In this document: piece after piece, positions 3,001 through 42,949 of the stretch
Layout of the letters: each line of letters starts with the position of its first letter
Numbering within the stretch: the stretch's first letter is position 1
Assembly (NCBI GenBank): GCA_002269645.1
Contig: NIVC01004514.1
Span: 1-43,562, forward strand
Direction: 5' to 3'
Source of the DNA: Macrostomum lignano
Lineage: Eukaryota
DNA: 43,562 nucleotides
Program-made: the position numbers and the translations under genes
The notes under the pieces: model-generated
The model's input: the letters and a program-made list of their open reading frames with translations, nothing else
Databases searched by the model: none
What the model was told of the DNA's origin: nothing

Positions 3001-3263
3001 AGAATTTTTAATTATATTTCCTAATGTTCAAGTATTGAGTAAAGTCAAAAAGTTCTTGTGTACTTAAAATATGTACTTACTTATTGTAAGTCTATTTAAG
3101 TCACTTAAAAGTACTTGTTTACTTAAAAGTAAGTAAAAATACTTATTGTATTTTAAATATTGTACTTTCTAAATAAATATACTAAATCTCTAAGGTTTGT
3201 ATGTTATCTATCAATTTGCATTACAAAGCATCCCTAATATGTTTAGTACATATGACTTGCAAA

Positions 3264-3730
3264 TAGTCTAGTGAAAAGTTATTGAACATACACACATACA
3301 AACAACATCAGTTTTAATATTTTGAGGTTAGTAACCTTTAATACCAAAAGCCTACCAATCTAGTCCCCATTATTTTATTATTAGAGGCAGGGGGTTGTTT
3401 GCACCCTGGTGCACTTTAAGCAACATAGGCACACAACAGAGGCATTACTGCCCATTCTGCTGACTCCCCTGAGCAGGCATACAAGTGCGCAGATATGTAC
3501 GCAAGCACACACTCACACAGGAGTGTACAGGGGCCCTAACTTTATATTATCGTTAGGCATGTACACTTCACTGCGCCTTGGGGGTTGGCTCTCAATGCTG
3601 TTAATTGCATGAGAAGAGCTAAGCCAAGATTCTAATTCAGCCCCAAATTAATGTGACTGCACTTGGAATCAAGCCTGGGTTGCTGGCACACCAGAGCAGC
3701 TGCGCTACCGCTGGGCTACAGCCCCCAATC
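3264..3730 (-). mobile_element. Putative tRNA-derived SINE relic; tRNA-like head at 3658-3726 on the minus strand
   Basis: Reverse complement of 3658-3726 reads GGGGCTGTAGCCCAGCGGTAGCGC...CCAGGCTTGATTCCAAGTGCA: a Pol III A-box (TAGCCCAGCGG), a decayed B-box and a partial acceptor stem. The segment is bracketed by a ~53-bp direct repeat (3211-3263 and 3731-3783, 2 mismatches). Confidence 0.45.
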
Positions 3731-4837
3731 TCAATTTGCATTATAAAGCATCCCTAATATGTTTGGTACATATGACTTGCAAAGTTGTTGAAAATTAATA
3801 AAAATGGTATAATGTATGGGGTAAAGTGTTGACCCATTAGAGTGAGCATATAAATGTATACATTATGTTATGTATTTGATTTATTAATCAAAATTAGTTT
3901 GTCGTTTCATTTAGTAAGGTATTTATTTTAAGCTAATATGTATAATAAAAAGTTAAAAGTATAATTCGACCTACTAATTAGGCTTGTATTCTAAGATATA
4001 AGGATTATCTGATAGGTTAGTAATCTAAATTTTTGTTTGATATTTACAGACTTATAGATTAAATATACAAACTAGTAAATTAGATTATGATGAAACATTG
4101 CTGGCATATACCAAAGCCTAGGGAAGTTTAATGATTATACATCTATATGTATTTTGCTAATTTTGAACTGTTGAAAAATAGACTTAAATGTTTATTTTAT
4201 TAGAATTTTTCAAATAGAATTATAAGGATATAATGTTCATTTAAAATTAGAAATCATAGTCTGATAGTTGCTAAGATCCTATAGTTTGTTTTATAAATAT
4301 TAATTTGTATAAGGTTTTGAATATGAAGTTCAAGTGTTATTTGCAGTTAGAGGTATGACAGTGGTTCAATCCTGTTCCTAAAATTCCGGAATCCTGGCAA
4401 ATTGGGATGCCAGTCCCATTTCTGTAATTCCAACAAACAATCCTATACAACCTCTAGCTATAGTTTGACTTATCAGCAATTGAATTTAAGAATGAAATTG
4501 AAAAAATTGACCTGAATAAGCACACAACTGTCAGTCGTCTGTGTTTTCAGCTTAATTATCATGGAAAGCTAATATAGGCACATAAGGTTTTCTATGTAAT
4601 TGTAAGGATGTGCTTTAACCCATTGGGTTCGAGCCCAGCCCAACTATGGTAATAAAATTCGCATGAAAAGCTTGGAGTACACATTCTTTCGTCGCTCTAT
4701 GGTCGCTATAATTGGCTTTCATGGGATTAAAATATCCTACATTTGTTACCGAAGTTATCCTACATTAGACCGAATTTTCTCAGAGCTGTATTAGCTTTTG
4801 CGTCTCAAATTTTGCTGAAGTTGCACTCTCCCTTGCC

Positions 4838-5704
<867 letters not shown>

Positions 5705-6850
5705 GATTGCGGCAACTGCTTGATAGCGACGCCTGTTTGCGGCCTGAGCAAGGAGACTAGCTGGGACAATTTAATATTTTGTTCCCTTACTTTGGTTGAA
5801 ATGGAGCTAGTAATTGGCCATACTTGACTTATTAATCAGTTTTAACGCAATTAATTATGCGCTATAAAAATAATAATTTATATTCAAACTTGTTCCTATT
5901 TGTAGCTGGGTGTAGTAGCGGCTCATCTTTATTAATGTACTCAAGACGTAGCAGCAAAAACCATTGTGCTTTTTACACTCATTTATTGCTAATGAAGCCG
6001 CAACAGCACCGTGGATTCTTCTCTCTGATAACTTCTTCGCTTAATAATTAACGCTACAGTAGTGACCTCGAATGTTAGTCTAACTTTGCGCATTGAGCTG
6101 TTGCATTGACACTTGCTAGGAACTTGCTACGATTCTTTTTGTCCTAAATCTGCTTCTTGACCCTTCAAAAATAATGTTCAATGTCTGAAATGTTTTTATT
6201 CTCTCTAATATAAGTCAATGATACAATTCATTCAAACCTGCACGACTTTGTCGGTCTTTGTTGTGCTTTATTTTCTCGCGTACTTGTCCGTGTCTCTTTG
6301 TGTCTTTGCACATTGACCCGTGTTTCTTTTTAATTCCCCGGTATAATATACTTAAGTTTAATTCGTTTAATGTAGCGTGCTTGCTTTTGTTTCTCTCGTT
6401 CTCTTCTCGTTATGCACAATGTGTTCCATAAGTTTAACAACCAATTAAAATATATTTATTAAATGCATATTTCTATACACTGGGCGAAAAATCGGCCTGT
6501 CTATTTTTTGGGAAAAATAAAACTTGAAAAAATATTTTTCGGTCGAAGCAAATACGTCAAACAGTTTTTATTTTATGCGGTACTAATAATGCGATCCTCG
6601 TTTTAAGTTTAGGCTAAAGCGTTACACCGGGCTGCGTACATGAATGTCACGTAGTGGCTTATCGGATTTTTAGATTAACGATCCAAGATTAAACACTGTG
6701 AAAACACAACTGTCCCAGCCCCAAGACCTTAATTTTAGCTAAATTGTGTGAACCAAACATCTTTTAAGCGAACATTATTTTTATTTTTCTATTACAAAAT
6801 CGGCGATAAAAACAACTTTTTAATATTTTAATTACATGCATGCTGTTCTA

Positions 6851-9800
6851 ATGGCTGGTCGAGGCCGGCCTATCCAGCCAGCAGTCGCTGATTTTAATGA
6901 CGAATGGGCTGCTGAACCAGCATCAGGAGATGATATCAATCAGCAAGGCACTAGCGACTGGAGTAGTGAACATTTAAATATCGATGTTGGCGGTAATCGT
7001 GTTCAAGGATCCAGTAGCCACAGAAACCAAGGACATCTTAGTGGCAATCAAGCGAGCTACTTCGATTACGGCGGAAATGAAGAGTCCCGAGATGGCTTTG
7101 GTAGCGGTCGGGGCCGTGGTGGCTTTGGAGCCCGTGGAGGCTTTGGTAGCGACAGAAACGAAGAACCTCGTGGAGGCTTTGATGGCGGTCGGGGCCGTGG
7201 TGGCTTTGGAGCCCGTGGAGGCTTTGGTAGCGACAGAAACGAAGAACCTCGTGGAGGTTTTGATGGCGGTCGGGGCCGTGGTAGCTTTGGAGCCCGTGGA
7301 GGCTTTGGTAGCGACAGAAACGAAGAACCTCGTGGAGGCTTTGATGGCGGCCGGGGCCGTGGTGGCTTTGGAGCCCGTGGAGGCTTTGGTAGCGACAGAA
7401 ACGAAGAACCTCGTGGAGGTTTTGATGGCGGTCGGGGCCGTGGTAGCTTTGGAGCCCGTGGAGGCTTTGGTAGCGACAGAAACGAAGAACCTCGTGGAGG
7501 CTTTGATGGCGGTCGGGGCCGTGGTGGCTTTGGAGCCCGTGGAGGCTTTGATAGCGACAGAAACGAAGAACCCCGAGGCGGCTTTGGTAGCGGTCGAGCC
7601 CGTGGAGGCTTTGGAGCCCGTGGAGGCTTTGATGGCGGTCGGGGCCGTGGAGGCTTTGGAGCCCGTGGAGGCTTTGGTAACGACAGAAACGAAGAACCCC
7701 ATGGAGGCTTTGATGGCGGTCGGGGCCGTGGTAGCTTTGGAGCCCGTGGAGGCTTTGGTAACGACAGAAACGAAGAACCCCGAGGCGGCTTTGGTAGCGG
7801 TCGAGGCCGTGGTGGCTTCGGCAGTGACCGTAGTCAAAGAGGTGGGTTCGGTGGCAATCAAGAGAGCGACTTCGATTACGGCGGAAATGAAGAGCCTCGA
7901 GGTGGCTTCGGTAGCGGTCGAGCCCGTGGTGGCTTTGAAGCTCGTAGAGGCTTTGATAGCGGTAGAGGCCGTGGTGGCTTCGGCAGTGACCGTGACCAAA
8001 GAGGTGGGTTCAGTGGTAATCAAGAGAGCGATTTCCAATTTGACAGAAACGCAGAACCTCGAGGAGGCTTTGGTGGTAGCCGAGGCCTTGGTCAAAGAAG
8101 TGGTTTTGGTGGCAATCAAGAAAGCGACTTTGATGGAGGCAGAAACGAGCGATCCCGAGGAGGCTTCGGCGGTCGTGGTCGGGGATCGAGAGACATAGAT
8201 GGCTTTAGATCGTTAAGTAGAGAAGATCAAAGTGGTGAAGAGTTCGAAAGGAGCAATCGAGGCTTCGGAAGTGGATTCGAAAGTAGAGACTTTTATCGTC
8301 GGGATAATGCAAATAACAATGGTGATAGCGTCTGCTTCAGGTGTCAGCAACCAGGACACTTTGCGCGAGAATGCACTAATTCTGGCGCGATTGCTTGTTT
8401 TAACTGCGGTGAGTCTGGCCACTTTGCCGCAGAATGTCCGAACACTCAACGCACTAGCAGAGATGGTCCATCAGCTGCTCATATCCCGGAGACGTCGGAA
8501 CTTGATGAGATATACAACCAAACTGTCCATGCCGGCATTAACTTTGACAACTACGAAAAAATTGATGTCGAAGTTTCGGGTGTTGACCGACCCGGCTACT
8601 TGCAATCATTTGATGAAATTGGCTTGTCCCCTGTCCTAATGGACAATATTTCTAAGAAGTTCAAGTATACAAAGCTAACACCCGTGCAGAGATACGCTAT
8701 TCCGATTGTACTTAAAGGTCGCGATTTAATGGCCTGTGCACAGACAGGGTCCGGGAAGACGGCGGCTTTTATACTGCCTATGGCAAAGTTAATCACTGAG
8801 ATAGGCGATATCAGCACTGGTGGAGGTTATACTACTTATCCGGTTGCTCTTGTCTTGGTACCGACCAGAGAACTCTGCAACCAGACGTTTGAATTCGGCC
8901 TGTAAGTTCATTGCTATTCTTGAATCAAATATATTCCATTAGTCTAGTGTTACTTTTAATCTTGTTTTTAGTTTCTGCTAGATAAAAGCAAGCATTTGTT
9001 CTCACATCACTTACAGAGGCTTTCTAGCTGGAACGGGCGTTCGAATTCAACGAATTTATGGCGGACCCAAGACGGACTACCTGCGTAATGAGCTGGCCAA
9101 TGGCTGCCACATTCTGGTGGCCACTCCCGGCCGGCTGAAGGACTTCGCCGAGAGGAACATTGTCAGTCTGAACAAGACCCGCTTCCTTGTGCTTGACGAG
9201 GCCGACCAGATGCTTGACAGGGGCTTCATGGACTCGGTGACTTGGACGCTGGACCAGATGCCATCCAATAGGCAGATTCTGATGTTCTCGGCTACCTTCC
9301 CTGGTCCGATTCAAGCTCTGGCTCAGCAGTACCTGCAGAACTATTTGTACCTGACTGTGGGTCAGGTGGGCGCAGCCAATCCCGACGTGACTCAGGAAGT
9401 TCGCGAGGTGCAGCAGGACGACAAGCAGGCCGCTCTGGAGTCAGTCATCGACGAGTGGCATTCGGATCCGGCTCGAAAGAGCGACCGGATTCTCATCTTC
9501 GTGGAGACAAAGCGACAGGCGGACTTTGTCGGACTGGCTCTGACGCAGAAGAAGCAGCTGCTCTGTACCACAATTCACGGAGACCGGCTCCAAAGCGAGC
9601 GCGAGACTGCTATCAGGGATTTCAAGAGGGGCAAGAAGCCGGTTATGGTCGCCACAAACGTGTCGGCTCGCGGCGTTGACATCAACGGAATCGAGCTGGT
9701 GATCAACATGGACCTGCCGAGCGACTTTCAAATGTACGTGCACCGCATTGGTCGCACAGGTCGCTGCGGCAACACAGGCAAGTCGATCTCGTTTTACGAC

Positions 9801-10076
9801 CACGGACGCGACTCGGCCCTGGCCCTCCTGTTGCGCCAGAATCTGGAGAAGTCCGGTCAGTCCGTGCCAGACTGGCTCGACGTTTACGCGGACCAGTCCG
9901 GCGGCGGCGACATGGGCGGCGTCGGTGGCTTCGTAGGCGGCAGCAATCGCGACATGAGGCGCGGCGTCGCCAGAGACCGGTTTCGCGAGCAGCCCGACGA
10001 GGGCGACTTCGCCGAGAGCGCGTTCCGTCCTGCCCCAGCCGCTGCTCAGCTATCCAACGACGATCCATGGGATTAA
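6851..10076 (+). CDS. vasa: Vasa/DDX4-type DEAD-box RNA helicase, copy 1, intact, ~1036 aa; join(6851..8901,9017..10076); alternative in-frame ATG at 6836
   Basis: N-terminal acidic-Trp motif (NDEW), long RGG/FG region and 2 CCHC knuckles (from 8333 and 8396). GINFDNY flank, Q motif, [30 protein letters not shown] and HRIGRTGR. Vasa-type C-terminus DDPWD. One phase-2 GT-AG intron (8902-9016) joins the two ORFs in frame. Confidence 0.93.
7085..8160 (+). repeat. Coding tandem repeat in vasa copy 1: 81-nt/27-aa unit (EEPRGGFDGGRGRGGFGARGGFGSDRN), then degenerate copies
   Basis: GAAGAACC recurs at 7160, 7241, 7322, 7403, 7484 and 7565 (exact 81-nt spacing). Confidence 0.95.
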
Positions 10077-11940
10077 TGATTAAATCTGTTTTTTTTGTAT
10101 AATCCCGCTACTGCACATCAGTAATTGGTAGTATTTTTGGTTAATTCGATTGTTTGATTAAGATTTCTTCCCCCGACTTGGCTTGACAAGATTTGGAATC
10201 GTAGATTAAAGACATCTACTGCTGCATATAGTGATCTTAATTTAAACATATGCCCAACGCTATTTTTTAGTCTAATGCGAACTTCGGACGGTTTTTTATC
10301 TGGAGAGTACAGCACATGCTTTTGCGGCAGTAAAGAACCTATTGCGTGAAGCGACCACCTATAAAATGCGTTATAGAAATCATGTATATACTAGCGTTTA
10401 GTGAGAATGAAGCTCCCGTCCTTTTGCCCCTCCCGCTGCTCCTCTACTCCTGCTCCGCCCTCCATCCAGAGTTATTATCCAACACTACTTAGACTCAAAA
10501 GACTGACAAGGAAACTCCAATATACTAATCAAACGAAGAGACCATCTAGAGACTTCTGGATCGAAGTGCACCAATATAGATAAGTAGCCCCCTTTTTATT
10601 TCACTGAATTGCTTTAAAAACATTGCATGTTTATTGTCTATTCGAAACTGCAACCATCAGGAATTAGAAATAAACATCCGTGTTGAGGGTTAAAAATCGA
10701 GAGAAACCTACTGAACCTTCGACTTGATTTATTGATTAGAAGCGCATAGACGGTGGGATTGTAGTACACCTTAATTTCGTAATTTAAATTGGTGCCAACT
10801 CGAGGCGGGTGTTAAGTAAAGCAAAGCAATCGCATCGCAATGTAATAATACTCGTATATCTTCGTTTCGTCCAATAATTTATATTCGTAACTTTATATCA
10901 GCTGAATTTCATCGCCTTAGCTCAATGGTGAGTCCAATAAATGCTGAATCATAGCTCGAACTGTTACTGGCTATGCTTTAGAGTGTGCCTAGTAAGCAGG
11001 GAGCTGTGCAAACTTGTGATTGGGCGGTAAAGGCTCAAAGTCAAATTTGGTGTCCTGCCTCCGTTCTTGCTACAAGAGACATCTTCAAAGAGAGAAACGA
11101 AAGAATAAGAAAAACAAAACATTTGATGCTCTAAGGTACAGATAATTTCTGTAGATTTTTTTAGTCACTAAAAGTTTGGCCACCGAATGTTTTAGCTTTT
11201 TTGCCACTAATTGGTCAAACGCTAAACTATATTCATTATACGCTACACCTACATTGCTTATTTTATTATTTGTTTTATTATTTTCACTATGTTATATGTG
11301 CATGCTATACTGAACTCTAATTGATCGGTTTCATTCACTAGTTATGTGCTTTTAGTGACAAACATTATCTTAAATGATTAAATCTATCCTAAATTTTTTG
11401 ATTAAATCTTATTAGTTGCTACGCAAAGCAAAAACTCAGGTCTTTCATAATTTCGCTTCGGTTACGGGTCGTTTTTTTCTGTTTTTATTTGGGTTTTTAG
11501 TACACGTTATTATTGTTTTTTTGTCATTTTTGCTTTTTGACGCTCAGAACGAACCTTTATTATTTTTGTTCGTGCTCAGAGGTCAGCAGAATCGGCATAA
11601 CTGCTAGCCTTCTTGATTTGCGACAGTGCCCAAGACCCCTTGCGAAGTAACTAGCCTGACTCTATTGACATATGTATCTGCTGATTAAATCTGCATCTAA
11701 TCCTAATATTTTGACGCGATAACATATTTGCATTGTGGTTCACAATGCAAAGAATCAATCATAATCTTATCTATGTTGTATACTAAGTAAAATATAAAGT
11801 TAATTAAGATTGCCTTGCTAATTTTACTGTCATGTTCTTCTTGTGTAAATTTCATTAAACTAAAGTCAGCTTTGCAGCCAAGATGCTCAGTAAAATTAGT
11901 ATTAAGATTCCCTATTATGCCTCCAGATTCTAAAATGGCA

Positions 11941-12319
11941 AGATGGGCCACTCAGGCATATATACTTAGTAAAACAGCTCTACTTTCAGTTCAGTAGCAA
12001 AGAAGAATATATAAGCTATTTTTTAGAAATAAAGGCAGCTGAAATGACTTTGATAAGTTCAGAAGCCCAAAGCTTGCAGGCGTAAACAGCTAGCTAATTG
12101 GTTCAGCAGTAATGTACATTAGCCAGTCCACTAAAATGTACATGGCAGCTTTAGGCTGGAATTCCGAGAAAGGCAATAAAAATTGGGTGGCGGAGCGGTG
12201 GTAGTGTGGAAGGGCACGGTTGGAGGGTTCAATTTGGGTGTTAAGAGCCAATAAATGAGCCTTGGCTTTAAAAATACATAAAAATGCTTCTGTTTAATTT
12301 ACTACTGAGCTGAAAGTAG
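11941..12319. mobile_element. MITE-like element, copy A (right end decayed); inverted relative to copy B at 26509-26926
   Basis: Begins with GATGGGCCACT. Has subterminal inverted repeats (11980-12000 versus 12299-12319). The interior matches the reverse complement of 26540-26926 over ~350 bp. Confidence 0.65.
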
Positions 12320-12829
12320 CATTTCTGCTAAAGGCTGTGCTATCGTCCGCACAAACAATAATAAGAATGGAATTAAGATCCAAAGGGGAGGAAAATGAAC
12401 TAAGATTGTCTTTGCTCACCAGTCAAACTTTTAGGCCATAGACAGTCCAGGTGGGAAACCATTGTCTTAGCAAAATCTAAAATTCTGCCAAACGTGCCAA
12501 TTAGATCATTTATAACTGTTCTCGATCGTCCTTTTGCCACAGTTGGCACAGCTATGACACAATTATGCTAATCAGCATATTACTGTGCTATGGAAACAGT
12601 TGCGAAACAGTTATGACTGTGCCACAATTGTGCAATAAGTGTCGATAGAGCCTTTTTTGCTACTAATCGACAATTATTTTTCCATTTGTTTCTTTACATC
12701 TGTAAGAGAATTAAATGTACTTGGCTAATTGTCGTAATATAAATTTTCGCTGCTCAATTATTGACTTTTGCTATGATAAAAATATTTGTTCATGTGCTGT
12801 TTTCAAAATCACCAAAGGTTGCATTAAAA

Positions 12830-15800
12830 ATGGCTGGCCGAGGATTTTTGCCCAAAGGCGACGTTGAAGACGAATGGTCGTCGGGAAATCTGAATAATGA
12901 CTTCAAGAAGATGACCTTTGGAGCTTCTAACGGCAGCAACGGATTCGGTGGCGCTTCGAACTATCAAAGTGGAGACACGGCTAATGGAGAAGGGGGTTTC
13001 GGCAGTGGCCGCAGTGGGTTTGGTGGAGGTCGCGGTGGCTTTGGCAGCGGTGCGCAAAATGGAGACAGAGGAGGTTCTGAAGGTCGTGGTGGTTTCGGTG
13101 GCGGGCGCGGTGGCTTTGGAAGCCGGAATGAAGACGCTCAGAACGATGATAGCGTCGGCTTTGGAAGCCGTGGAGGGTTCGGGGGTGGTCGAGGTGGAGG
13201 CCGTGGCGGCTCCTCTGCTTGCTTCAAGTGCAACGAGAGCGGTCATATGGCACGAGACTGCCCGAATGCTGATTCTCAAGAAAGACGTGGCGGCTTTGGT
13301 GGTGGAGGCCGTGGCGGCTCCTCTGCTTGCTTCAAGTGCAACGAAAGTGGCCATATGGCACGAGACTGCCCAAATGCTGATTCTCAAGAAAGACGTGGCG
13401 GCTTTGGTGGTGGAGGCCGTGGCGGCTCCTCTGCTTGCTTCAAGTGCAACGAAAGTGGCCATATGGCACGAGACTGCCCAAATGCTGAAGGACAAGGTTC
13501 TAGTGGTGGATTTGGTAGTCGTGGAGGTGGCGGATTCGGCCGTGGAGGAGGCCGTGGCGGCTTTGGAGCCTCCGCTAATGATGGCGCTGAAGGTAGCGGA
13601 GGTAGCTTCGGCAGCCGCGGTGGTGGTGGCTTCGGCAGTCGCGGAGGAGGCCGAGGTGGCTTTGGAGCCTCCGATGATGATGGCGCTGATGGTGGCGGAG
13701 GTGGCTTCGGCAGCCGCGGTGGTGGCTTTGGCAGTCGCGGTGGTGGCTTTGGCAGTCGTGGAGGAGGCCGAGGCGGTTTGGAGCCTCCGCTGATGATGGC
13801 GCGGATGGTGGCGGAGGTGGCTTCGGCAGCCGCGGTGGTGGCTTCGGCAGCCGTGGAGGAGGCCGAGGTGGCTTCGGAGCCTCCGCTGATGATGGCGCTG
13901 ATGGTGGCGGAGGTGGCTTCGGCAGCCGCGGTGGTGGCTTTGGCAGCCGCGGAGGAGGCCGAGGTGGCTTCGGAGCCTCTGCTGATGATGGCGCTGAAGG
14001 TGGCGGAGGTGGCTTCGGCAGCCGCGGTGGTGGCTTTGGCAGCCGCGGAGGAGGCCGAGGTGGCTTTGGAGCCTCCGCTGATGATGGCGCGGATGGTGGC
14101 GGAGGTGGCTTCGGCAGCCGCGGTGGTGGCTTTGGCAGCCGCGGAGGAGGCCGAGGTGGCTTTGGAGCCTCCGCTGATGATGGCGCTGGAGGCGGCGGTG
14201 GTGGTTCTGTCTGCTACAAGTGCAACCAGAGTGGCCATTTTGCCCGCGAGTGTCCAAACGCTGAAGCTGGAGGCGGCGGTGGCGGTTCTGTCTGCTACAA
14301 GTGCAACCAAAGCGGCCATTTTGCTCGCGAATGTCCGAACGCGGACGCACGTGCCTGCTTTCGCTGTAAGGAGACGGGCCACATCTCTGCCGACTGCCCG
14401 AATGTCGCCGCCGGTGATGCCCCCGGTGCCTCGACTGCTCACGTGCCTGAGGAGTCTCAGCTAGACGAGATTTATAGCCGGACCGTCCACACGGGCATCA
14501 ATTTCGACAAGTACGAGCAAATCAACGTAGAGGTGTCGGGCACCGACAAGCCGGGCTATCTGACCAGCTTCGATGCCATCGGGCTGCCCAGCGTGATGCT
14601 GGATAACATTCTCCGCAAGTACAACTACAACAAGCTCACGCCGGTGCAGAAGTACGGCATCCCCATCATCCTCAAGGGAAGAGATCTGATGGCCTGCGCC
14701 CAGACGGGCTCTGGCAAGACTGCGGCCTTTTTGCTGCCTCTGGCAAAGATGATCGCCGAGCTGGACACCAACGATTCTACTGTTGCTCAGTACACCACCT
14801 ACCCGGTCGCTCTTATACTGACTCCTACCCGAGAGCTGTGCAATCAAATTTATGATTTCGCTAGGTAAGTTCTTTGTCAGTAAATAATTTCACTATTGAT
14901 TAATCTTTAATAGCTCAAACACAAGGTAATAAGTTGAGTTGAATTGAATTTAGTTCGTGCAGTTTTAATCCATAATCATGCCTTTAACTAAATGAAGCTA
15001 AATATTTTTACAGACATGGCTGTATGTATTGTATATAACAATTTATTTCAAATACTAGTGCATGCCAGTGTCAGTAATTTAGCTTTTCCAGCTCGTTCTA
15101 TCCAATGTTGCTTTCAGCAAATTTTTGTACCCATTCAAAAACGTCATGCGCTGTCATACCACAAGTGGAATTGTGTCAAGTGTCTGCGATCGGAGTCTGA
15201 ACTGCAGCACCTCGTTAATGTTGGTGGCGGCACTCTTAATGTTATGGCGAATGGTGATCGCTATACTATCGATACGCACATTTCCTCTGCTGCATCTCTG
15301 TGTGAGGATATTCACATCTACTTTTCCAAGAGCTCAAATCGGACAAAGAAGTTCGAAGCCCTTCACATGGCGTTGAAGGTGGCCACGCACACATTCCTTT
15401 AAGAATGTGCAACGTGCTGGTTGGAGCTACTGCCCTACCTAGTGCGACTCGAGAAGCAGTGAATTATACTTCGCAGCATACTTTGTAGAGCAGCTTAGTC
15501 GAATACAATGATGCGGCTGCATCCAACGCTCGAATCCATGGCAGGGCATCAGGCAAGCTCTTTAGGACACGTCGACTCGATTAGCAATTAGTTTTCCATA
15601 TCCAGCGTCTTTTACAGAAGTACAAGATATAAAGTTTCAGCTGGAAAACACTGCTTGTTCACGACATCCATAAGCAGACTGTTAGACTGTTAGAGTACTG
15701 TAATCGCTGAGAATCATTTCTACCGAATGGACTTCCAGAATCCAGATTGCTACTATCCAATTTCCGTTGGCAAAAATCGGCGTCGGTTCGGACACCAAAT

Positions 15801-18800
15801 GGCTGTTGGTTGAGGATCCGAGAGCCAGGCACAAACCCACCTGCAGAACCTACCTGCCGTTTCCAAGGGCCTCTATGTAAATCCGATAGATAATGAATAT
15901 TTGTGCAGGTCCGTCTATGGTTAATCTAACAAAGTCTTTTTCTCAGCCGTCCCGGTTTTTTCGATGTTCCAGAGCGAGGTTCATCATCAGTTGATGATTC
16001 TCCTTCTTTAAAGCGGTTGTACCACTTTTACGCAGCCCGCTGAAACATGGTTTTGTCTCTGTACGCTATGTACTTGTGCAGCAGGAATTCCGACGCAGGA
16101 TTACGTCGATGGAGTAAAGACTCCGTTTCCATTATTTACGAGTCCGTCAGGTGATTTGCTGAATATTTGTTGTTTTAGAGTTCTCTGCACAGCGCTAGGA
16201 GCATTAAAACTTTCTAAAACTCGAGGATTTGACCATAGCCTATGTATTGGTCTTATCAAAGCTCAAAGCAGCAGCCCCATACATGTATATGGTCGATACT
16301 TGATTGCACGAAGACTTAGACTTCGTGGACTTAGAAGAATCGTAGACTTACGATTGCACCCTCGGAGCTGGACCAGCTGACAATGAAGGTACACCTATTC
16401 ACCTATTCAACATGAGGTCCACTTCCTCTGCTGGAACCACGGATGCGAGGCGAATTAAGGATTTGGTAAGGAATGACACTCGAGCGTAGTCCATTGAGTT
16501 CCCTTCTTTGGATCGCCTAGAACTGTTTTATGATAGCGCTGACGGTGAACGTTTCATTGGAAAGTAAGTGCCATGACATCCATGCCCAGAAAAAGCGCGA
16601 ACGTTCGTAGCTCGTGTATACAACTGGAGTGAACTCGCATCTAGCGAGGAGCTAAGTCTGAGGTCTTTGGTGTTATATTGCCACCCGATCGGGTATCTGG
16701 TAGACAAATTTCAAACTGCACGTTTCCTTCTTTTACGATCCATAGAGTCCTGACCACGCTCACTGTGACTTAGTCTTATATCACTCGTTACCATGCATCA
16801 CCCACACCATTTGGCTGCAGCTCTGGTGACTGTCAACTTTAAATGGATTCACCAACTGTTCTCAGAGTTCCGTCAAACATTTTAACAGGACGGGCCGCTT
16901 TCACATTAAAATTCACTTTGTCAGAACTTACTTATCATCCAGGTATTGTTTTATAATTAGAGATTCCATCTCCACGTGTTGTTCTATAATTGAAGATCCC
17001 ATCACCCTGACTCCTGATCTCCAAGTAGGTATTATTCCGTACGAGTAATTCGATCCAATATAGTTTTAAAAAAACTGAAAAAAATAGCTTAATATTCAAG
17101 TCCAAATACTGTCAATCCATTAAGCTTGAAAAGCGTTTATTCTTATGATGTGTAAAAGGTTCGTTCCAGTAGTACGAGGGCTGATCAAAAAGTTCTGCAA
17201 GTGACCTCAACTCAGTGTTACAGCAGCCGAGGCGTCTAATCAGTGTCACATTCCCTCAAGGTACTTTCCACCACCATCTATGCACCGTCGCATGCTTGTG
17301 CACCATATCTGAAAGCAGTCATGGTACTCCGAGGTTGGTATACCCTGTAGAGCTGAATGTACCGCTTGGGCAAGGTCTTGTATGCGTTAAAACGGCCTCC
17401 CAGAAATGACGGATTTGATCCTCAGGAACAGCCAAAAGTCACAGGGTGCTAGGTCTGGAGAGTAGGGTGGATGGGGCAGCAGCCGGACCCCCTGCTGTTC
17501 CAGGTATGCCATGGTTGAGGCCGCTCTCTGCGGTGCCGCATTGTCATGGTGCAGCAGGAGTCGAGGTCCATGTCTGGTTCGCGCACGTTCCTGCCGCTCC
17601 TGCAGCACGCCTGGCAGAACAGTGTCTGTGTAGTACCTGGCAGTCAATGTGGCACCCGTTGGAAGGATGTTCACCGATAAAACACCCTGAAAGTTGAAAA
17701 AATGGTAAACATCCGCTTCCGACTGCGGAATCCGGTCTTCAGCACCTCAGGCCTTGGCTCATCTTCTGCCAGCCAGACCATGTTAGACTGCTTATCCTTC
17801 ATGGTAAAGAAGGAGATCCAACATTCGTCTCTGTGATGACATTCGACAGTCGTCGTGGGCCGTGGGGCTCAAACATTTGCAGCCACAAGCAACAGATGCG
17901 CACCCTCTCTGCTTGCTGCTCCGGAGTGAGAACATGGGGTACCCACCCAGCGCAGGTCTTTGTGCGGCCCAGTTGCTCATGCATGATCCATAGCTGACAC
18001 CAAGCTCATAGGCAAGGAATCTCAGCGTAATGCTCCGATCCTCACGAATTATTGCATTGGCACGGGCCACGACATCTTCGGTCACGGATGTCCGGGGTCG
18101 GCCAGACCACGATTCATCGTTGAAGCCGTCCCGGCCTTCCGGGAAATGGCGCACCCAGCGGGCAACCGTGTCAAATTATTGAAGCAGAGTCAGCTAAAAT
18201 ATTCACTAGATCAGTATGAATCTCAGTCGCTCTGCAGCCAGATTGCATGCGCATAAAGATATAGAAGCGAACACTGTCTTTTGATAGTGGAAAATATATG
18301 GCTGTGAAATTTGACTGGCGCAAAGTTTTTGGCTTTTGCCGATTCTATATCTAAAAGCTATAACAAGAGGTTGCAGAACTTTTTGATCACCCCTCGTATC
18401 AACTAAAACAATGCAGTTTATTCAGGCAGTAATTAATAGCATTCAAGGTGATAATGACAATAAAGTCAGGCAGTAATTAAAATTAGTTTCCTATATAGCA
18501 AGTATTTTTTCAAATCGGAACTATAGCGTTGTGTTTTATGTAAGAATTTTCACCTCTCCTTCTGTCAGGGGATTTCTGGCTGGCACAAATATTCACGCCA
18601 AGCGCGTCTACGGCGGTCCCAAGACCGACTACTTGCGCGCGGAACTGGCCAACGGCTGCCACATTCTGGTGGCCACTCCCGGCCGGCTGAAGGACTTCGC
18701 CGAGAGGAACATTGTCAGTCTGAACAAGACCCGCTTCCTTGTGCTTGACGAGGCCGACCAGATGCTTGACAGGGGCTTCCTGGACTCGGTGACCTGGACG

Positions 18801-19616
18801 CTGGAGCAGATGCCTTCTGACAGGCAGATTGTGATGTTCTCGGCCACGTTCCCTAATCAGATTCAAGCTCTGGCTCAGCAGTACCTGCAGAACTATTTGT
18901 ACCTGACTGTGGGTCAGGTGGGCGCAGCCAATCCCGACGTGACTCAGGAAGTTCGCGAGGTGCAGCAGGACGACAAGCAGGCCGCTCTGGAGTCAGTCAT
19001 CGACGAGTGGCATTCGGATCCGGCTCGAAAGAGCGACCGGATTCTCATCTTCGTGGAGACAAAGCGACAGGCGGACTTTGTCGGACTGGCTCTGACGCAG
19101 AAGAAGCAGCTGCCCTGCACCACAATTCACGGAGACCGACAGCAGCGCGAGCGCGAGACTGCTATCAGGGATTTCAAGAGGGGCAAGAATCCGATTATGG
19201 TCGCCACAAACGTGTCCGCTCGCGGCGTCGACATCAACGGAATCGAGCTGGTGATCAACATGGACCTGCCGAGCGAATTCGACATGTACGTGCACCGCAT
19301 TGGTCGCACAGGTCGCTGCGGCAACACAGGCAAGTCGATCTCGTTTTACGACCACGGACGCGACTCGGCCCTGGCCCTTCTGTTGCGCCAGAATCTGGAG
19401 AAGTCCGGTCAGTCCGTGCCAGACTGGCTCGACGTTTACGCGGACCAGTCCTGCGGCGGCGACGGCGGCTTTGTAGGCGGCAGCAATCGCGACATGAGGC
19501 GCGGCGTCGCCAGAGACCGGTTCCGCGAGCAGCCCGACGAGGGCGACTTCGCCGAGAGCGCGTTCCGTCCTGCCCCAGCCGCTGCTCCGGCAGCCGAAGA
19601 AGAGGCCTGGGATTGA
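12830..19616 (+). CDS. vasa: Vasa/DDX4-type helicase, copy 2; join(12830..14864,18569..19616); one 1-nt deletion at ~13777-13779 (assembly error or pseudogenising); ~1027 aa if corrected
   Basis: MAGRG...EDEW start, 3+3 CCHC knuckles, RGG repeats, all helicase motifs intact, ends EEEAWD. The frame after 13780 is open through the knuckles into the helicase. The phase-2 intron (14865-18568, 3704 bp) is at the same position as in copies 1 and 3. Confidence 0.8.
13500..14195 (+). repeat. Coding RGG/FG tandem repeat of vasa copy 2 ([32 protein letters not shown]-like units)
   Basis: Recurrent GGAGCCTCCGCTGATGATGGCGC...GGCTTCGGCAGCCGCGGTGGT blocks. Confidence 0.9.
15170..16260 (+). pseudogene. Probable decayed hAT-family transposase fragment inside the vasa copy 2 intron
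   Basis: Translation of 15200-15470 gives [14 protein letters not shown]...[16 protein letters not shown]...[23 protein letters not shown]. This resembles the hAT pattern (C.LH..HN ... YF..S..R..F ... H..L....TRWL.....L.R...QW), with stops and R>C substitutions. No TIRs found. The right boundary is uncertain. Confidence 0.5.
17175..18396 (-). mobile_element. Full-length (1222 bp) decayed mariner (Tc1/mariner, DD34D) transposon inside the vasa copy 2 intron
   Basis: 26-bp TIRs CGAGGGCTGATCAAAAAGTTCTGCAA (17175-17200) and TTGCAGAACTTTTTGATCACCCCTCG (18371-18396) with 1 mismatch, and TA on both sides (17173-74, 18397-98). Minus-strand fragments: HTH ([22 protein letters not shown]), WVPHVL, a frameshifted IT(G)DE, and HHDNA-34 aa-D with [10 protein letters not shown]. 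At least three frameshifts. Confidence 0.93.
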
Positions 19617-23075: not shown

Positions 23076-26074
23076 ATGGCTGGCAAGAGATTCCTTATTA
23101 AAGACGCCAACGAAGACGAATGGGCGCCATTGACTGATGATTTTTCAAAGCTGACCCTTGGAGCCGACCGTAATGTAGCATCGACTGGTCGCGGTGGTCG
23201 CTTTGGCAGCCGCGGAGGAGGCCGTGGCGGCTTCGGAGCCTCCGCTGATGATGGCACTGAAGGTGGCGGAGGTGGCTTCGGCAGCCGCGGTGATGGCGGA
23301 TTCGGCAGTCGTAGAGGAGGCCGTGGCGGCTTCGGAGCCTCCGATGATGATGGCGCTGATGGTGGCGGAGGTGGCTTCGGCAGCCGCGGTGATGGCGGAT
23401 TCGGCAGCGTAGAGGAGGCCGTGGCGGCTTCGGAGCCTCCGATGATGATGGCGCTGATGGTGGCGGAGGTGGCTTCGGCAGCCGCGGTGATGGCGGATTC
23501 GGCAGTCGTAGAGGAGGCCGTGGCGGCTTCGGAGCCCATGCTGATGATGGCACTGAAGGTGGCGGAGGTGGCTTCGGCAGCCGCGGTGATGGCGGATTCG
23601 GCAGTCGTAGAGGAGGCCGTGGCGGCTTCGGAGCCCATGCTGATGATGGCACTGAAGGTGGCGGAGGTGGCTTCGGCAGCCGCGGTGGTGGTGGTGGCTT
23701 CAGCAGCCGCGGTGGTGGTGGTGGCTTCAGCAGCCGCGGTGGTGGTGGTGGCTTCAGCAGCCGCGGTGGTGGTGGCTTCTGCAGTCGTGGAGGAGGTCGA
23801 GGTGGCTTTGGAGCCTTCGTTGATGATGGCACTGATGGTGGTGGAGGTGGCTTCGGCAGTCGCGGTGGTGGCTTTGGCAGCCGCGGAGGAGGCCGTGGCG
23901 GCTTCGGAGCCTCCGCTGATGATGGCGCTGAAGGTGGCGGAGGTGGCTTCGGCAGCCGCGGTGATGGCGAATTCGGCAGTCGTAGAGGAGGCCGTGGCGG
24001 CTTCGGAGCCCATGCTGATGATGGCACTGAAGGTGGCGGAGATGGCTTCGGCAGCCGCGGTGGTGGTGGCTTCTGCAGTCGTGGAGGAGTTCGAGGTGGC
24101 TTTGGAGCCTCCGTTGATGATGGCGCTGATGGTGGCGGAGGTGGCTTCGGCAGCCGCGGTGGTGGCTTTGGCAGCCGCGGAGGAGGCCGAGGTGGCTTCG
24201 GAGCCTCCGCTGATGATGGCGCTGGAGGCGGCGGTGGCGGTTCTGTCTGCTACAAGTGCAAACAAAGCGGCCATTTTGCTCGCGAATGTCCGAACGCGGA
24301 CGCATGTGCCTGCTTTCGCTGTAAGGAGACGGGCCACATCTCTGCCGACTGCCCGAATGTCGCCGCCGGTGATACTTCCGGTGCCTCGACTGCTCACGTG
24401 CCTGAGGAGTCTCAGCTAGACGAGATTTATAGCCGGACCGTCCACACGGGCATCAATTTCGACAAGTACGAGCAAATCAACGTAGAGGTGTCGGGCACCG
24501 ACAAGCCGGGCTATCTGACCAGCTTCGATGCCATCGGGCTGCCCAGCGTGATGCTGGATAACATTCTCCGCAAGTACAACTACAACAAGCTCACGCCGGT
24601 GCAGAAGTACGGCATCCCCATCATCCTCAAGGGAAGAGATCTGATGGCCTGCGCCCAGACGGGCTCTGGCAAGACTGCGGCCTTTTTGCTGCCTCTGGCA
24701 AAGATGATCGCCGAGCTGGACACCAACGATTCTACTGTTGCTCAGTACACCACCTACCCGGTCGCTCTTATACTGACTCCTACCCGAGAGCTGTGCAATC
24801 AAATTTATGATTTCGCTAGGTAAGCTTTTCAACTTTCTGTTCGTCCTGACAGAGACCAAGTGCCAGGGTAAATGAGTAAGTGTCAAACCGGCATTTTAGG
24901 GTCAATCGATATAAACGGTACTAAATGCAGAATTAAAAGTACTCGTACGTAATTATTAATAGGTAAAATTCGTGCTTTTTGGGATTGTATTTAAAGCGAT
25001 GCTATAGCGATAGCTCTTCGTCTCATTCCTTCTGTCAGGGGATTTCTGGCTGGCACCAATATTCGCGTCAAGCGCGTCTACGGCGGTCCCAAGACCGACT
25101 ACTTGCGCGCGGAACTGGCCAACGGCTGCCACATTCTGGTGGCCACTCCCGGCCGGCTGAAAGACTTCGCCGAGAGGAACATTGTCAGTCTGAGCAAGAC
25201 CCGCTTCCTTGTGCTTGACGAGGCCGACCAGATGCTTGACAGGGGCTTCCTGGACTCGGTGACTTGGACGCTGGAGCAGATGCCTTCTGACAGGCAGATT
25301 GTGATGTTCTCGGCTACCTTCCCTGGTCCGATTCAAGCTTTGGCTCAGCAGTACCTGCAGAACTATTTGTACCTGACTGTGGGTCAGGTGGGCGCAGCCA
25401 ATCCCGACGTGACTCAGGAAGTTCGCGAGGTGCAGCAGGACGACAAGCAGGCCGCTCTGATTGAAATTCTCAAGCATTGGCGCAGCGACCCCAGCCAGGC
25501 GGACGATCGCATTCTGATCTTTGTTGAGTCAAAGCGCAAAGCCGACTATGTCGGCCTCATGCTATCTGACGGCGGCTTCCCGTGCACCACAATTCACGGG
25601 GACCGGCTGCAGCGCGAAAGAGAAATCTCCCTGCGCTCGTTCCAGCGTGGCAGGCTGCCGATTATGGTCGCCACAAACGTGTCCGCTCGCGGCGTCGACA
25701 TCAACGGAATCGAGCTGGTGATCAACATGGACCTGCCGAATGACTTCGACATGTACGTGCATCGCATTGGTCGCACAGGTCGCTGTGGCAACCCGGGAAA
25801 GTCGATCTCGTTTTACGACCACAGACGCGACTCGGCCCTCGCTCTCAAGTTGCGCCAGAATCTGGAGAAGTCCGGTCAGTCCGTGCCAGACTGGCTCGAC
25901 GTTTACGCGGACCAGTCCGGCGGCGGCGGCTTCGTAGGCGGCAATCGCGACATGAGGCGCGGCGTCGCCAGAGACCGGTTTCGCGAGCAGCCCGACGAGG
26001 GCGACTTCGCCGAGAGGATGTTCCGTGCCAACCCGGTGGCTACACAGCCGGTCATCGCTGACGATTGGGATTGA
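23076..26074 (+). CDS. vasa: Vasa/DDX4-type helicase, copy 3; join(23076..24819,25039..26074); one 1-nt deletion at ~23408; ~926 aa if corrected
   Basis: MAGKR...EDEW start preceded by an acceptor-like AACAG. RGG repeats, 2 CCHC knuckles (24248-24355), all helicase motifs, ends ADDWD. The frame from 23411 is open to the donor at 24820. 219-bp phase-2 intron. AATAAA at 26099-26104. Confidence 0.8.
23195..24230 (+). repeat. Coding RGG/FG tandem repeat of vasa copy 3
   Basis: Same unit family as in copy 2, with variants [18 protein letters not shown] and a run of FSSRGGGGG. Confidence 0.9.
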
Positions 26075-28202: not shown

Positions 28203-42880
<14,678 letters not shown>

Positions 42881-42949
42881 CTGAGCAGATTTTGGACAAA
42901 GAGTTGGCTTGTCACTACGTGTAGAATTTGCTGTTGGGCTCAGAGGAGC

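What the first reader, a model, noticed from the sequence alone, without database searches (positions are those of the whole stretch)
9017..10055. Patchwork gene conversion among the three vasa helicase exons; copy 2 is a chimera
Copy 1 differs from copies 2 and 3 at most synonymous sites in exon 1 and the first ~85 nt of exon 2. From ~9102 (18654, 25127) all three are nearly identical. After ...GCCGCTCTG (9437, 18989, 25459), copies 1 and 2 share [16 protein letters not shown]...TQKKQL, while copy 3 has [16 protein letters not shown]...SDGGFP. At finer scale, copies 1 and 3 share FPGPIQ against FPNQIQ in copy 2, whereas copies 2 and 3 share LDSV..EQMPSD. So copy 2 is copy-3-like in RecA1 and copy-1-like in the start of RecA2, and tree topology flips along the exon. 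This indicates repeated interlocus conversion or unequal crossover. A ~60-codon RecA2 segment of copy 3 escapes homogenisation and is a candidate specificity patch.
Basis: partly seen in the sequence, partly recalled or inferred. Interest (0 to 1): 0.7.

Follow-up and report, generated by a model that had tools for sequence, protein, structure and literature searches.

The report
Gene conversion mosaic in flatworm vasa triplet
Three neighbouring copies of the germline/stem-cell helicase gene vasa (macvasa) in the flatworm Macrostomum lignano have repeatedly copied pieces of their exons onto one another. This is an ordinary process, but it left one small unconverted island on the surface where Vasa normally docks its activator proteins.

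Summary
The window holds three tandem, same-strand Vasa-like DEAD-box genes: c1 6851-10076, c2 12830-19616, c3 23076-26074. Each has two exons and one phase-2 intron at the same position.

Along the aligned helicase region the tree flips in blocks:
- Block A, up to 9101: c1 is saturated against c2=c3 (pS 0.85).
- 9102-9437: all three are nearly identical.
- 9438-9637: c3 is 41% different from c1=c2.
- 9638-10016: nearly identical again.
- The last ~19 codons: c3 diverges again.

Permutation of site patterns gives p<=1e-4. DNA homology between copies stops at the exon edges; introns, upstream regions and 3' flanks are unalignable. This points to exon-restricted non-allelic gene conversion, not recent duplication or unequal crossover.

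The locus is Macrostomum lignano macvasa. UniProt models from another assembly reproduce the c1 and c3 mosaics. The state of c2's island has no independent confirmation. Donor and recipient are unresolved, and base composition hints that c1 received its exon 2 from c2.

The unconverted island covers motif IV and the RecA2 alpha2 helix that binds eLOTUS domains in Drosophila Vasa. Its dN/dS is about 0.2, and a role in partner specificity is untested.

This is a new example of a well-known process, of practical relevance to macvasa reagents.

The parts
6851..8901 (+). c1 exon 1. It encodes an RGG repeat region (81-nt units), 2 CCHC zinc knuckles and RecA1 through motif Ia. The helicase part (about 8366-8901) is the unconverted 'alpha' lineage, with GC3 0.46.
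   Evidence: Translation. Pfam DEAD and zf-CCHC. Donor GT at 8902. pS 0.85 vs c2/c3. GC3.
9017..9101 (+). First 85 nt of c1 exon 2. It is still c1-specific and marks the left limit of all c1 conversion tracts, next to the non-homologous intron.
   Evidence: Site patterns. Intron heterology.
9102..9437 (+). Block B in c1 (= c2 18654-18989, c3 25124-25459). It covers RecA1 motifs Ib to III plus the linker and is homogenised in all three copies (16 variable sites in 336 nt). It contains two micro-clusters: 9254-9279 is c1-specific and 9293-9307 is c2-specific (FPNQIQ).
9438..9637 (+). Block C in c1, the 'ESV-type' island. It is shared with c2 (18990-19189; 9 nt differences between c1 and c2).
   Evidence: The same nucleotides appear, frame-shifted, in UniProt models P0001 and P0003.
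25460..25656 (+). Block C in c3, the 'IEIL-type' island of 66 codons. It is 41% different in nucleotides and 43% in amino acids from c1/c2. It covers RecA2 alpha1, motif IV, the alpha2 (eLOTUS-contact) helix, motif IVa and alpha3.
   Evidence: Present in P0001 part c and in P0002.
9638..10016 (+). Block D in c1 (= c2 19190-19556, c3 25657-26014). It covers motifs V and VI and the start of the C-terminal extension and is homogenised in all three copies (dS 0.09-0.15).
10017..10076 (+). C-terminal tail. c3 (26015-26074) is diverged from c1=c2 up to about 10046. After that all three copies differ. All three end in a Trp-Asp (..PWD / ..AWD / ..DWD).
12830..14864 (+). c2 exon 1. It encodes an RGG region, 6 CCHC knuckles and RecA1. 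It is 99% identical to c3 over the unique helicase part (7 differences in 621 nt). A 1-nt deletion at about 13779 breaks the frame.
14865..18568 (+). c2 intron, 3.7 kb against 115 nt in c1 and 219 nt in c3. It is not alignable to the other introns. It carries a degenerate Tc1/mariner-like element at 17173-18398.
18569..19616 (+). c2 exon 2. The first 85 nt are c3-like (with IHAK against c3's IRVK), block B carries the c2-specific FPNQIQ, the island is ESV-type, and the last 9 codons are c2's own.
23076..24819 (+). c3 exon 1. It encodes an RGG region (99-nt units), 2 CCHC knuckles and RecA1. A 1-nt deletion at about 23408 breaks the frame.
25039..26074 (+). c3 exon 2.

Best explanation
The window carries the Macrostomum lignano macvasa locus. 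It is three tandem Vasa-like DEAD-box paralogues that are anciently diverged but undergo recurrent non-allelic (interlocus) gene conversion.

Proposed mechanism (inferred, not shown): a break in one copy is repaired from a neighbouring copy. Only exon sequence is still alignable, so every tract starts and ends inside an exon. At least four to five events are needed, ordered here by synonymous divergence:
1. The most recent is a c2/c3 exchange covering exon 1, from the RGG repeats to the splice donor (dS 0.013).
2. One c1/c2 tract of about 950 nt from 9102 to about 10047 (dS about 0.085).
3. Exchanges that made blocks B and D of c3 like the other two copies (dS 0.07-0.15).
4. Short clusters at 9254-9279, 9293-9307 and 9728-9731. 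These are either micro-tracts or leftovers of patchy mismatch repair.

Three stretches were never overwritten:
- c1 exon 1 plus the first 85 nt of its exon 2, which lack a homologous anchor on the intron side.
- A 67-codon island at the start of RecA2, which exists in two old forms: ESV-type in c1 and c2, IEIL-type in c3.
- The C-terminal tail.

Shown: the mosaic, its significance, the exon restriction and the relative ages. Inferred: the repair mechanism, the number of events, and GC-biased conversion as a cause of high GC3 in the converted blocks. Open: which copy was donor, and why the island persists.
For: - Three intact helicase cores with the same phase-2 intron position.
- Block pattern of site types and per-block dS/pS.
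- Permutation tests: p<=1e-4 for the c2=c3 and c1=c2 runs, 2e-4 for c1=c3, and 49 label changes against 195 +/- 8 expected.
- c1-c2 dS is uniform over blocks B, C, D and E (0.095, 0.077, 0.088, 0.078), as expected for a single tract.
- c2/c3 homology runs 13505-14869 vs 23468-24824 and 18557-19568 vs 25027-26026 and nowhere else. Introns, 400-nt 3' flanks and 600-nt upstream regions score within shuffled-sequence nulls.
- Exon 1 dS of 0.013 therefore cannot come from a recent whole-locus duplication.
- GC3 is 0.46 in the only never-converted helicase stretch, against 0.71-0.83 elsewhere.
- Identity of the locus: P0002 is CAL91030.1, the M. lignano DEAD-box helicase (macvasa). P0001 and P0003 are M. 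lignano UniProt models.
- P0001 strings the three copies in the same order and carries c1 = alpha RecA1 + ESV island and c3 = beta RecA1 + IEIL island + c3 tail. P0003 repeats the c1 state.
- The converted tracts still differ by 3-4% with copy-specific substitutions, which collapsed reads would not produce.
Against: - No reads were available, so phasing rests on this assembly plus protein models from another assembly of the same inbred line.
- c2's ESV-type island has no independent confirmation, because P0001's c2 part stops at ..EVREV.
- The published macvasa cDNA (P0002) joins c2-like RecA1, including FPNQIQ, to a c3-type island and tail. Either another homeologous copy has a different mosaic or that cDNA is a PCR chimera. 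It carries about 10 singleton changes at conserved positions.
- M. lignano assemblies are known to contain chimeric scaffolds between subgenomes (PMC10733133).
- c2 and c3 each carry a 1-nt frameshift in the RGG repeats. This shows either imperfect consensus accuracy or that these copies are not functional.
Confidence: 0.85

Rival explanations
1. Assembly or polishing artefact. Reads from paralogous or homeologous copies were collapsed or mis-polished, creating the identical blocks and in particular the c1-like island in c2.
For: - M. lignano has three subgenomes about 1-2% apart, and 36% of Mlig_3_7 scaffolds are chimeric (PMC10733133).
- Single-base frameshifts in the c2 and c3 RGG repeats suggest residual consensus errors.
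- The macvasa cDNA shows c2-like RecA1 with a c3-type island.
- c2's island is not independently confirmed.
Against: - P0001 and P0003, from another assembly, reproduce the c1 and c3 mosaics and the copy-specific markers IHAK/IRVK and N/S in SLNKTR/SLSKTR.
- The shared blocks are not identical. c1 and c2 differ at about 34 sites over 950 nt, with copy-specific clusters.
- Subgenome chimerism mixes sequences 1-2% apart. It cannot create 36-41% divergent blocks.
- c2's island lies 130 nt from the c2-specific FPNQIQ in the same exon, well within one read.
Confidence: 0.06
2. Unequal crossing-over between misaligned tandem copies produced hybrid genes, rather than non-crossover conversion.
For: The copies are tandem and in direct orientation, 6.5-9.5 kb apart, which is the geometry that allows unequal exchange.
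Against: - A crossover hybrid would share the donor's downstream intron or flank. No pair shares any 3' flank, intron or upstream homology.
- The c1/c2 similarity ends about 30 nt before the stop codon.
- The pattern has several internal switches (A|B|C|D|E), which needs double-ended tracts.
Confidence: 0.04
3. The c3 island and tail did not escape homogenisation. They were imported into an already homogenised c3 from an unseen diverged paralogue or homeologous cluster elsewhere in the genome.
For: - The island is more diverged in protein than the c1 vs c2/c3 split in RecA1: 57% vs 71% identity, and 37% vs 57% at columns that vary among outgroups (Fisher p=0.023).
- The genome holds three homeologous versions of every locus.
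- The macvasa cDNA shows that the IEIL island can sit in a different context.
Against: - No donor was seen.
- The nearest other M. lignano helicase (P0005) is only 49% identical and differs in the island.
- ESV and IEIL types are each other's closest relatives; for example both have ..VGL.L where other Vasa proteins have ..LAS/IAT.(F/Y)L.
- Import needs two separate tracts, one for the island and one for the tail.
Confidence: 0.2
4. Conversion templated by spliced cDNA or RNA, which would explain why homology stops exactly at the exon edges.
For: c2/c3 identity runs right up to the exon 1 donor and resumes 12 nt before exon 2.
Against: - All three copies keep the intron at the same phase-2 position. 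A cDNA tract crossing the junction would delete it.
- c1 keeps 85 unconverted nt at its exon 2 edge, as expected for genomic templates that need flanking homology.
- Termination of tracts at the limit of homology explains the edges without RNA.
Confidence: 0.03

Closest known systems
Concerted evolution of tandem duplicates by non-allelic gene conversion with unconverted 'islands' (textbook cases from my own knowledge: human RHD/RHCE, red/green opsins, gamma-globins)
   Same: - Mosaic of homogenised and ancient blocks.
- Synonymous sites homogenised.
- Tracts confined to still-homologous (exonic) sequence.
- Short islands of high divergence flanked by near-identity.
- GC-rich converted segments.
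   Different: The gene family is the Vasa germline helicase and the host is a neopolyploid flatworm. Whether selection maintains the island, as it does in the opsin and RH cases, is untested here.
macvasa of Macrostomum lignano (CAL91030.1 = P0002; Pfister et al. 2008, as cited in PMC4604429)
   Same: It is 94% identical to c3 exon 2. It has the same RGG + CCHC + DEAD-box architecture and the c3-type N-terminus, island and tail.
   Different: - The literature treats it as one gene with 'two isoforms' (PMC4604429). The window shows three paralogues.
- The cDNA combines states found in different copies: c3 N-terminus, c2 knuckles/IHAK/FPNQIQ, c1 FMDS..LDQ, c3 island.
- The published qPCR primers match c1 perfectly (forward) and c2 perfectly (reverse), with no single copy matching both.
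Drosophila Vasa C-terminal RecA domain bound to the Oskar eLOTUS domain (PDB 5NT7; Jeske et al. 2017, PMC5458760)
   Same: The RecA2 domain aligns over its whole length (E=8e-43). The island includes the alpha2 helix through which Vasa contacts eLOTUS.
   Different: - Drosophila F504 and F508, both required for binding, correspond to F and A in c1/c2 (ADFVGLAL) and to Y and M in c3 (ADYVGLML).
- Position 508 is reported as strictly aromatic from insects to humans, and it is not aromatic here.
- Whether M. lignano Vasa proteins bind eLOTUS domains at all is unknown.
Multi-copy Vasa families elsewhere (C. elegans GLH-1 to GLH-4, Schistosoma vasa-like genes; from my own knowledge and PMC3373655)
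   Same: Several Vasa/PL10-like paralogues with differing numbers of CCHC knuckles and glycine-rich repeats.
   Different: I found no description of those genes as a tandem array undergoing exon-level conversion. Four searches combining vasa (or Macrostomum lignano) with gene conversion, paralogues or duplication found no such report.

Membership tests
Vasa/DDX4-like DEAD-box helicase | Complete DEAD-box core (motifs Q, I, Ia, Ib, II DEAD, III SAT, IV, V, VI) | tested here: met
   [33 protein letters not shown](T/S)[12 protein letters not shown] and HRIGRTGR are present in all three copies. Pfam DEAD E=4.8e-17 on exon 1 alone.
Vasa/DDX4-like DEAD-box helicase | N-terminal RGG/glycine-rich repeats with CCHC zinc knuckles, and an acidic C-terminus with a terminal tryptophan | tested here: met
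   RGG repeat arrays. zf-CCHC E=1.4e-15. 2, 6 and 2 knuckles in c1, c2 and c3. Tails are ..DDPWD..EEAWD and ..ADDWD.
Vasa/DDX4-like DEAD-box helicase | Closer to Vasa than to PL10/DDX3 | tested here: inconclusive
   The best solved relatives are Bombyx Vasa 4D25 (266 bits) and Drosophila Vasa 2DB3 (264 bits), against DDX3X at 243 bits. The margin is small and no phylogeny was built. The copies are 94% identical to the protein published as macvasa.
Vasa/DDX4-like DEAD-box helicase | eLOTUS-contact signature on RecA2 alpha2: invariant Phe at Drosophila position 504 and an aromatic at 508 (PMC5458760) | tested here: not met
   c1/c2 have F504 and A508. c3 has Y504 and M508. Among 140 homologues, F/Y/W hold position 508 in 90.
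Interlocus (non-allelic) gene conversion | Significant spatial clustering of incompatible site patterns (tree flips) between paralogues | tested here: met
   Runs of 161, 58 and 5 sites, with p<=1e-4, <=1e-4 and 2e-4. 49 label changes against 195 expected.
Interlocus (non-allelic) gene conversion | Homogenisation affects synonymous sites, so it is not explained by protein constraint | tested here: met
   dS is 0.07-0.15 in blocks B and D. In blocks A and C, pS is 0.68-0.85 (dS about 1.8-2.3 in C, beyond correction in A) within the same exon.
Interlocus (non-allelic) gene conversion | Tracts are internal (both ends in homologous sequence) and flanks are not co-transferred, which distinguishes conversion from crossover or fresh duplication | tested here: met
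   No intron, upstream or 3'-flank homology above shuffled nulls.
Interlocus (non-allelic) gene conversion | Mosaic verified on independent molecules or assemblies | tested here: inconclusive
   The c1 and c3 states are reproduced in P0001 and P0003. c2's island is not covered, and no reads are available.
Interlocus (non-allelic) gene conversion | Donor and recipient polarised with an outgroup | not testable with these tools
   No Macrostomum orthologues could be retrieved (look-ups). Only compositional hints are available.

The most novel reading that the evidence does not exclude
The 67-codon island, together with the C-terminal tail, is a two-state cassette (ESV-type and IEIL-type). Selection keeps it from being homogenised in a family that otherwise evolves in concert. 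It covers the helix through which Vasa is docked and activated by eLOTUS proteins, and both critical positions differ between the two states (F/A vs Y/M). On this reading it would sort the paralogues into two partner-specific classes, for example different TDRD5/7-like scaffolds or neoblast versus germline granules.
Probability: 0.15. Interest if true: 0.6.

Novelty: new member of a known kind. Interest (0 to 1): 0.35.

Why it matters
For evolutionary genetics this is a clean but ordinary example of exon-restricted concerted evolution with an unconverted island.

For the Macrostomum community it has practical weight:
- 'macvasa', a standard germline and neoblast marker and piRNA-pathway knock-down target, is at least three tandem genes. 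With three subgenomes there may be up to nine copies.
- Their helicase blocks B and D are 93-95% identical at the DNA level. Probes and dsRNA designed on these blocks, and antibodies raised against them, would therefore be expected to hit all copies.
- The N-terminal disordered regions, the island and the tails are copy-specific.
- The reference cDNA and the published qPCR primers combine states from different copies.
- The reported 'two isoforms' may be paralogues. This is my inference.

If the island proves to be selectively maintained, it would be a natural experiment on Vasa-eLOTUS recognition.

Tried and rejected
- A full helicase-core query to the search for homologous proteins timed out.
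- A 99-aa tail query found nothing. A 113-aa RecA1 N-terminal query found only two distant ENA fragments. That index did not return the M. lignano proteins, so no orthologues from sister species could be used as outgroups.
It found no record for six contiguous ORFs from the window, so no independent DNA was obtained.
- Protein constraint as the cause of the identical blocks is rejected by the synonymous-site pattern.
- Recent duplication as the cause of c2=c3 in exon 1 is rejected by the absence of intron and flank homology.
- A distant DEAD-box donor such as PL10 for c3's island is rejected. The two island types are each other's closest relatives, and the nearest other M. lignano helicase is 49% identical.
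- A relative-rate comparison of the two island types against 140 homologues showed no asymmetry (10 vs 6 derived states, p=0.45). Neither type looks degenerate.
- Pfam scans of ORFs in the downstream 27-43 kb found nothing. That region is made of minisatellite arrays.
- Structure prediction was not run. The allowed inputs would have given only a very shallow alignment, and the sequence alignment to 5NT7/2DB3 already places the island.
Full report
**Gene models.** The window carries three same-strand genes with the same build.
- c1: ATG 6851, exon 1 to 8901, intron 8902-9016, exon 2 9017-10076.
- c2: ATG 12830, exon 1 to 14864, intron 14865-18568, exon 2 18569-19616.
- c3: ATG 23076, exon 1 to 24819, intron 24820-25038, exon 2 25039-26074.

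Each gene encodes a glycine/arginine-rich repeat region, CCHC zinc knuckles (2, 6 and 2 in c1, c2 and c3), a complete DEAD-box core and an acidic tail ending in Trp-Asp. The single intron sits at the same phase-2 position, just after motif Ia. The finding's start, 9017, is exactly the first base of c1 exon 2.

I built a codon alignment from the last knuckle to the stop codon and classed every variable site by which copy is the odd one out.
- Block A (c1 8366-9101: the exon 1 helicase part plus the first 85 nt of exon 2): 225 of 621 sites have c1 odd, and c2 and c3 differ at only 7 sites.
- Block B (9102-9437 = 18654-18989 = 25124-25459): 16 variable sites in 336 nt.
- Block C (9438-9637 = 18990-19189 = 25460-25656): 80 of 197 sites have c3 odd, against 5 for c1 and 2 for c2.
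- Block D (9638-10016): 25 variable sites in 358 nt.
- Tail E (10017-10073): c3 is odd at 17 of 54 sites, and the last ~9 codons differ in all three.

**The pattern is not chance and not protein constraint.** Nei-Gojobori estimates:
- c1 vs c2/c3 in A: pS 0.85, beyond saturation.
- c2 vs c3 in A: dS 0.013.
- c3 vs c1 or c2 in C: dS 1.8-2.3.
- All pairs in B and D: dS 0.066-0.147.

Shuffling the 387 polymorphic-site labels 10,000 times never gave runs like those observed. The observed runs were 161 sites for c2=c3, 58 for c1=c2, and 5 for c1=c3 (p=2e-4). Labels change 49 times along the alignment, against 195 +/- 8 expected.

**Homology is confined to exons.** Self-BLAST and local alignments with shuffled nulls show that c2 and c3 align only over 13505-14869 vs 23468-24824 and 18557-19568 vs 25027-26026. 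The first stretch runs from the RGG repeats to the exon 1 donor plus 5 nt. The second runs from 12 nt before exon 2 to the tail. c1 aligns to the others only from about 9014/9057 to 10028/10074. Introns, 600 nt upstream and 400 nt downstream are indistinguishable from shuffled sequence for every pair.
- The 99% identity of c2 and c3 in exon 1 therefore cannot be a young duplication. It must be a recent conversion.
- A crossover hybrid would have carried flank homology with it.
- The 85 unconverted nucleotides at the 5' edge of c1 exon 2 are what one expects when tracts need a homologous anchor and the intron offers none.

**Relative timing and direction.**
- c1-c2 dS is uniform across B, C, D and E (0.095, 0.077, 0.088, 0.078). 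This fits one tract of about 950 nt from 9102 to about 10047.
- The c2/c3 exon 1 exchange is younger (0.013).
- B and D of c3 were homogenised at about the age of the c1/c2 tract or a little earlier. The counts are too small to separate these.
- Short clusters look like micro-tracts or patchy heteroduplex repair: 9254-9279 (six c1-specific sites in 26 nt), 9293-9307 (five c2-specific sites in 15 nt, FPNQIQ) and 9728-9731.

Which copy gave and which received is not settled. That is the most economical for blocks A and C alone. Two points complicate it:
- The c2/c3 exon 1 conversion is needed in any scenario.
- Composition points the other way. c1's untouched stretch has GC3 0.46, while everything from 9102 on has GC3 0.71-0.83 in all copies. 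In block A, c1 is AT-shifted relative to c2/c3 (120 S>W vs 61 W>S). The ESV-type island shows no such shift relative to the IEIL type (28 vs 28; binomial p=0.009).

So c1 may be the recipient of a c2-derived exon 2. Alternatively, GC-biased conversion has raised GC wherever exchange occurs. I could not retrieve an outgroup to decide.

**What the locus is.** A full HMMER scan of 1.84 billion representatives with c3 exon 2 found three close proteins and then nothing above about 52% identity. Cluster look-up names the three.
- P0002 is CAL91030.1, 'DEAD box helicase [Macrostomum lignano]', the published macvasa.
- P0001 (A0A1I8HZT3) and P0003 (A0A1I8JLJ9) are M. lignano genome-derived models.

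P0001 is a fused model that runs through the three copies in the window's order.
- Its first part has c1's RecA1, FMDS..LDQ..SN..IL, FPGPIQ and ESVIDEWHS. This is followed by a frame-shifted reading of exactly the ESV-type nucleotides.
- Its second part has c2's IHAK and stops at EVREV.
- Its third part has c3's IRVK, SLSKTR, the IEIL island and the c3 tail.

P0003 is a second c1-like model, again with ESV-type nucleotides read out of frame. These models differ from the window by about 1%. That matches the roughly 1.1% CDS divergence among the three subgenomes (S, L1, L2) of this neopolyploid (PMC10733133).

The c1 and c3 mosaics are therefore reproduced either in another assembly of the same locus or in a homeologous locus. 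In the second case the mosaic predates the subgenome split, which is consistent with dS 0.085 being greater than about 0.01-0.02.

**The published cDNA is a different mosaic.** P0002 has c3's N-terminus, c2's knuckle arrangement, IHAK and FPNQIQ, c1's FMDS..LDQ, and c3's island, block D markers and tail. It also has about ten singleton changes at conserved positions, for example YAHRIGR and KHCRSD, which are typical of cloned PCR products. It is either a PCR or RACE chimera, or a copy from another subgenome with yet another combination. I cannot tell which.

The qPCR primers published for Macvasa (PMC4604429) match c1 perfectly with the forward primer and c2 perfectly with the reverse. No single copy matches both. 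The same paper speaks of 'two isoforms' of Macvasa. These may be paralogues, which is my inference.

**Where the island sits.** The best solved relatives are Bombyx Vasa 4D25 and Drosophila Vasa 2DB3 (266 and 264 bits), ahead of DDX3X (243 bits). The RecA2 domain aligns end to end with the Vasa chain of the Vasa-Oskar LOTUS complex 5NT7 (E=8e-43).

The island runs from the helix before motif IV, through motif IV and the alpha2 helix, to motif IVa and the next helix. It stops just before motif V. Jeske et al. (PMC5458760) report three relevant points:
- eLOTUS is contacted mainly through alpha2 of the Vasa C-terminal domain.
- F504E or F508E abolishes binding and stimulation.
- F504 is invariant and position 508 is aromatic from insects to humans.

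Here c1/c2 read ADFVGLAL (F, A) and c3 reads ADYVGLML (Y, M). Among 140 homologues, position 508 is F, Y or W in 90. Neither type, however, has the canonical signature.

**Selection on the island.**
- dN/dS across the island is 0.19-0.24, so both forms have been under purifying selection.
- The core motifs inside it are conserved: [21 protein letters not shown].
- The differences lie in the three helices.
- The island is more diverged in protein than the c1 vs c2/c3 split in RecA1. Identity is 57% (CI 46-69) against 71% (CI 65-78). At columns that vary among outgroups it is 37% against 57% (Fisher p=0.023). This is a modest hint of older separation or faster change.
- Derived states are spread over both types (10 vs 6, p=0.45).

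None of this shows specificity. It leaves the idea open.

**Rivals.**
- An assembly artefact is unlikely for the overall mosaic. It is reproduced in other models, and the shared blocks still differ by 3-4% with copy-specific clusters. It is not formally excluded for c2's island.
- Unequal crossover and cDNA-templated conversion are disfavoured by the flank data and by retention of the intron.
- Import of c3's island from an unseen copy remains possible, at about 0.2.

**Verdict.** This is a real, statistically strong, exon-restricted gene-conversion mosaic in the M. lignano macvasa triplet. The mechanism is well known, and my literature searches found no prior description of it for vasa or for this species. 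It is a new member of a known kind. Its practical value lies in macvasa reagents and annotation. It also yields a testable side-hypothesis about the eLOTUS-docking helix.

Noticed in passing
window 13772-13785 (c2) and 23397-23415 (c3): Each of c2 and c3 has a single-base deletion inside its RGG repeat array. c2 reads GGCGGTTT-GGAGCC. c3 reads GGCAG-CGTAGAGG where sister units at 23298, 23495 and 23594 read GGCAGTCGTAGAGG. As a result the ATG frame and the helicase frame differ (total CDS lengths 3083 and 2780 nt, both 2 mod 3). The macvasa cDNA is open throughout, and the other assembly's model reads in frame through the repeat unit that holds the c2 site. Consensus errors are therefore likelier than pseudogenes, but this is unproven.
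   Followed up: partly
window 17173-18398 (inside the c2 intron): A degenerate Tc1/mariner-like element. It has 28-nt terminal inverted repeats (17173-17200 and 18371-18398, 96% complementary). Broken minus-strand ORFs give weak HTH_32 (E=0.002) and DDE_3 (E=0.003) matches and a ..[14 protein letters not shown].. motif. It accounts for about a third of the 3.7-kb intron.
   Followed up: partly
window 11924-12320 and 26538-26944: A roughly 400-bp repeat pair, 88% identical and in inverted orientation. One copy lies about 500 nt upstream of the c2 ATG and the other about 470 nt downstream of the c3 stop, so the pair brackets c2 and c3. Its nature (transposable-element fragment or other) was not determined.
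   Followed up: no
window 27213-43562, and 21218-21630: The downstream 16 kb is largely a succession of different minisatellite arrays. Periods include 17, 23/29, 25 (3.1 kb, 31957-35106), 28, 36, 44, 45 and 18 nt, plus (AGTC)n and (CTAT)n runs. No ORF there matched Pfam.
   Followed up: partly
window 6851-8300, 12830-14200, 23076-24240: The N-terminal disordered regions of the three paralogues are built from different repeat units: 81 nt in c1, 96 and 108 nt in c2 (the 108-nt unit carries a whole CCHC knuckle), and 99 nt in c3. Knuckle numbers differ (2, 6, 2). The copies therefore differ far more in their condensate-forming parts than in the helicase.
   Followed up: no
window 9223-9242, 18826-18845 (published primer sites): The qPCR primers published for Macvasa (PMC4604429) match perfectly on different paralogues. 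The forward primer matches c1, with 2 and 1 mismatches to c2 and c3. The reverse primer matches c2, with 2 and 1 mismatches to c1 and c3. The reference cDNA CAL91030.1 is a mosaic not seen in any single copy of this window.
   Followed up: yes
window 1-6800: The upstream region is very AT-rich (GC 0.28-0.40), against 0.50-0.60 in the vasa exons. It contains no long ORF with a Pfam match.
   Followed up: no
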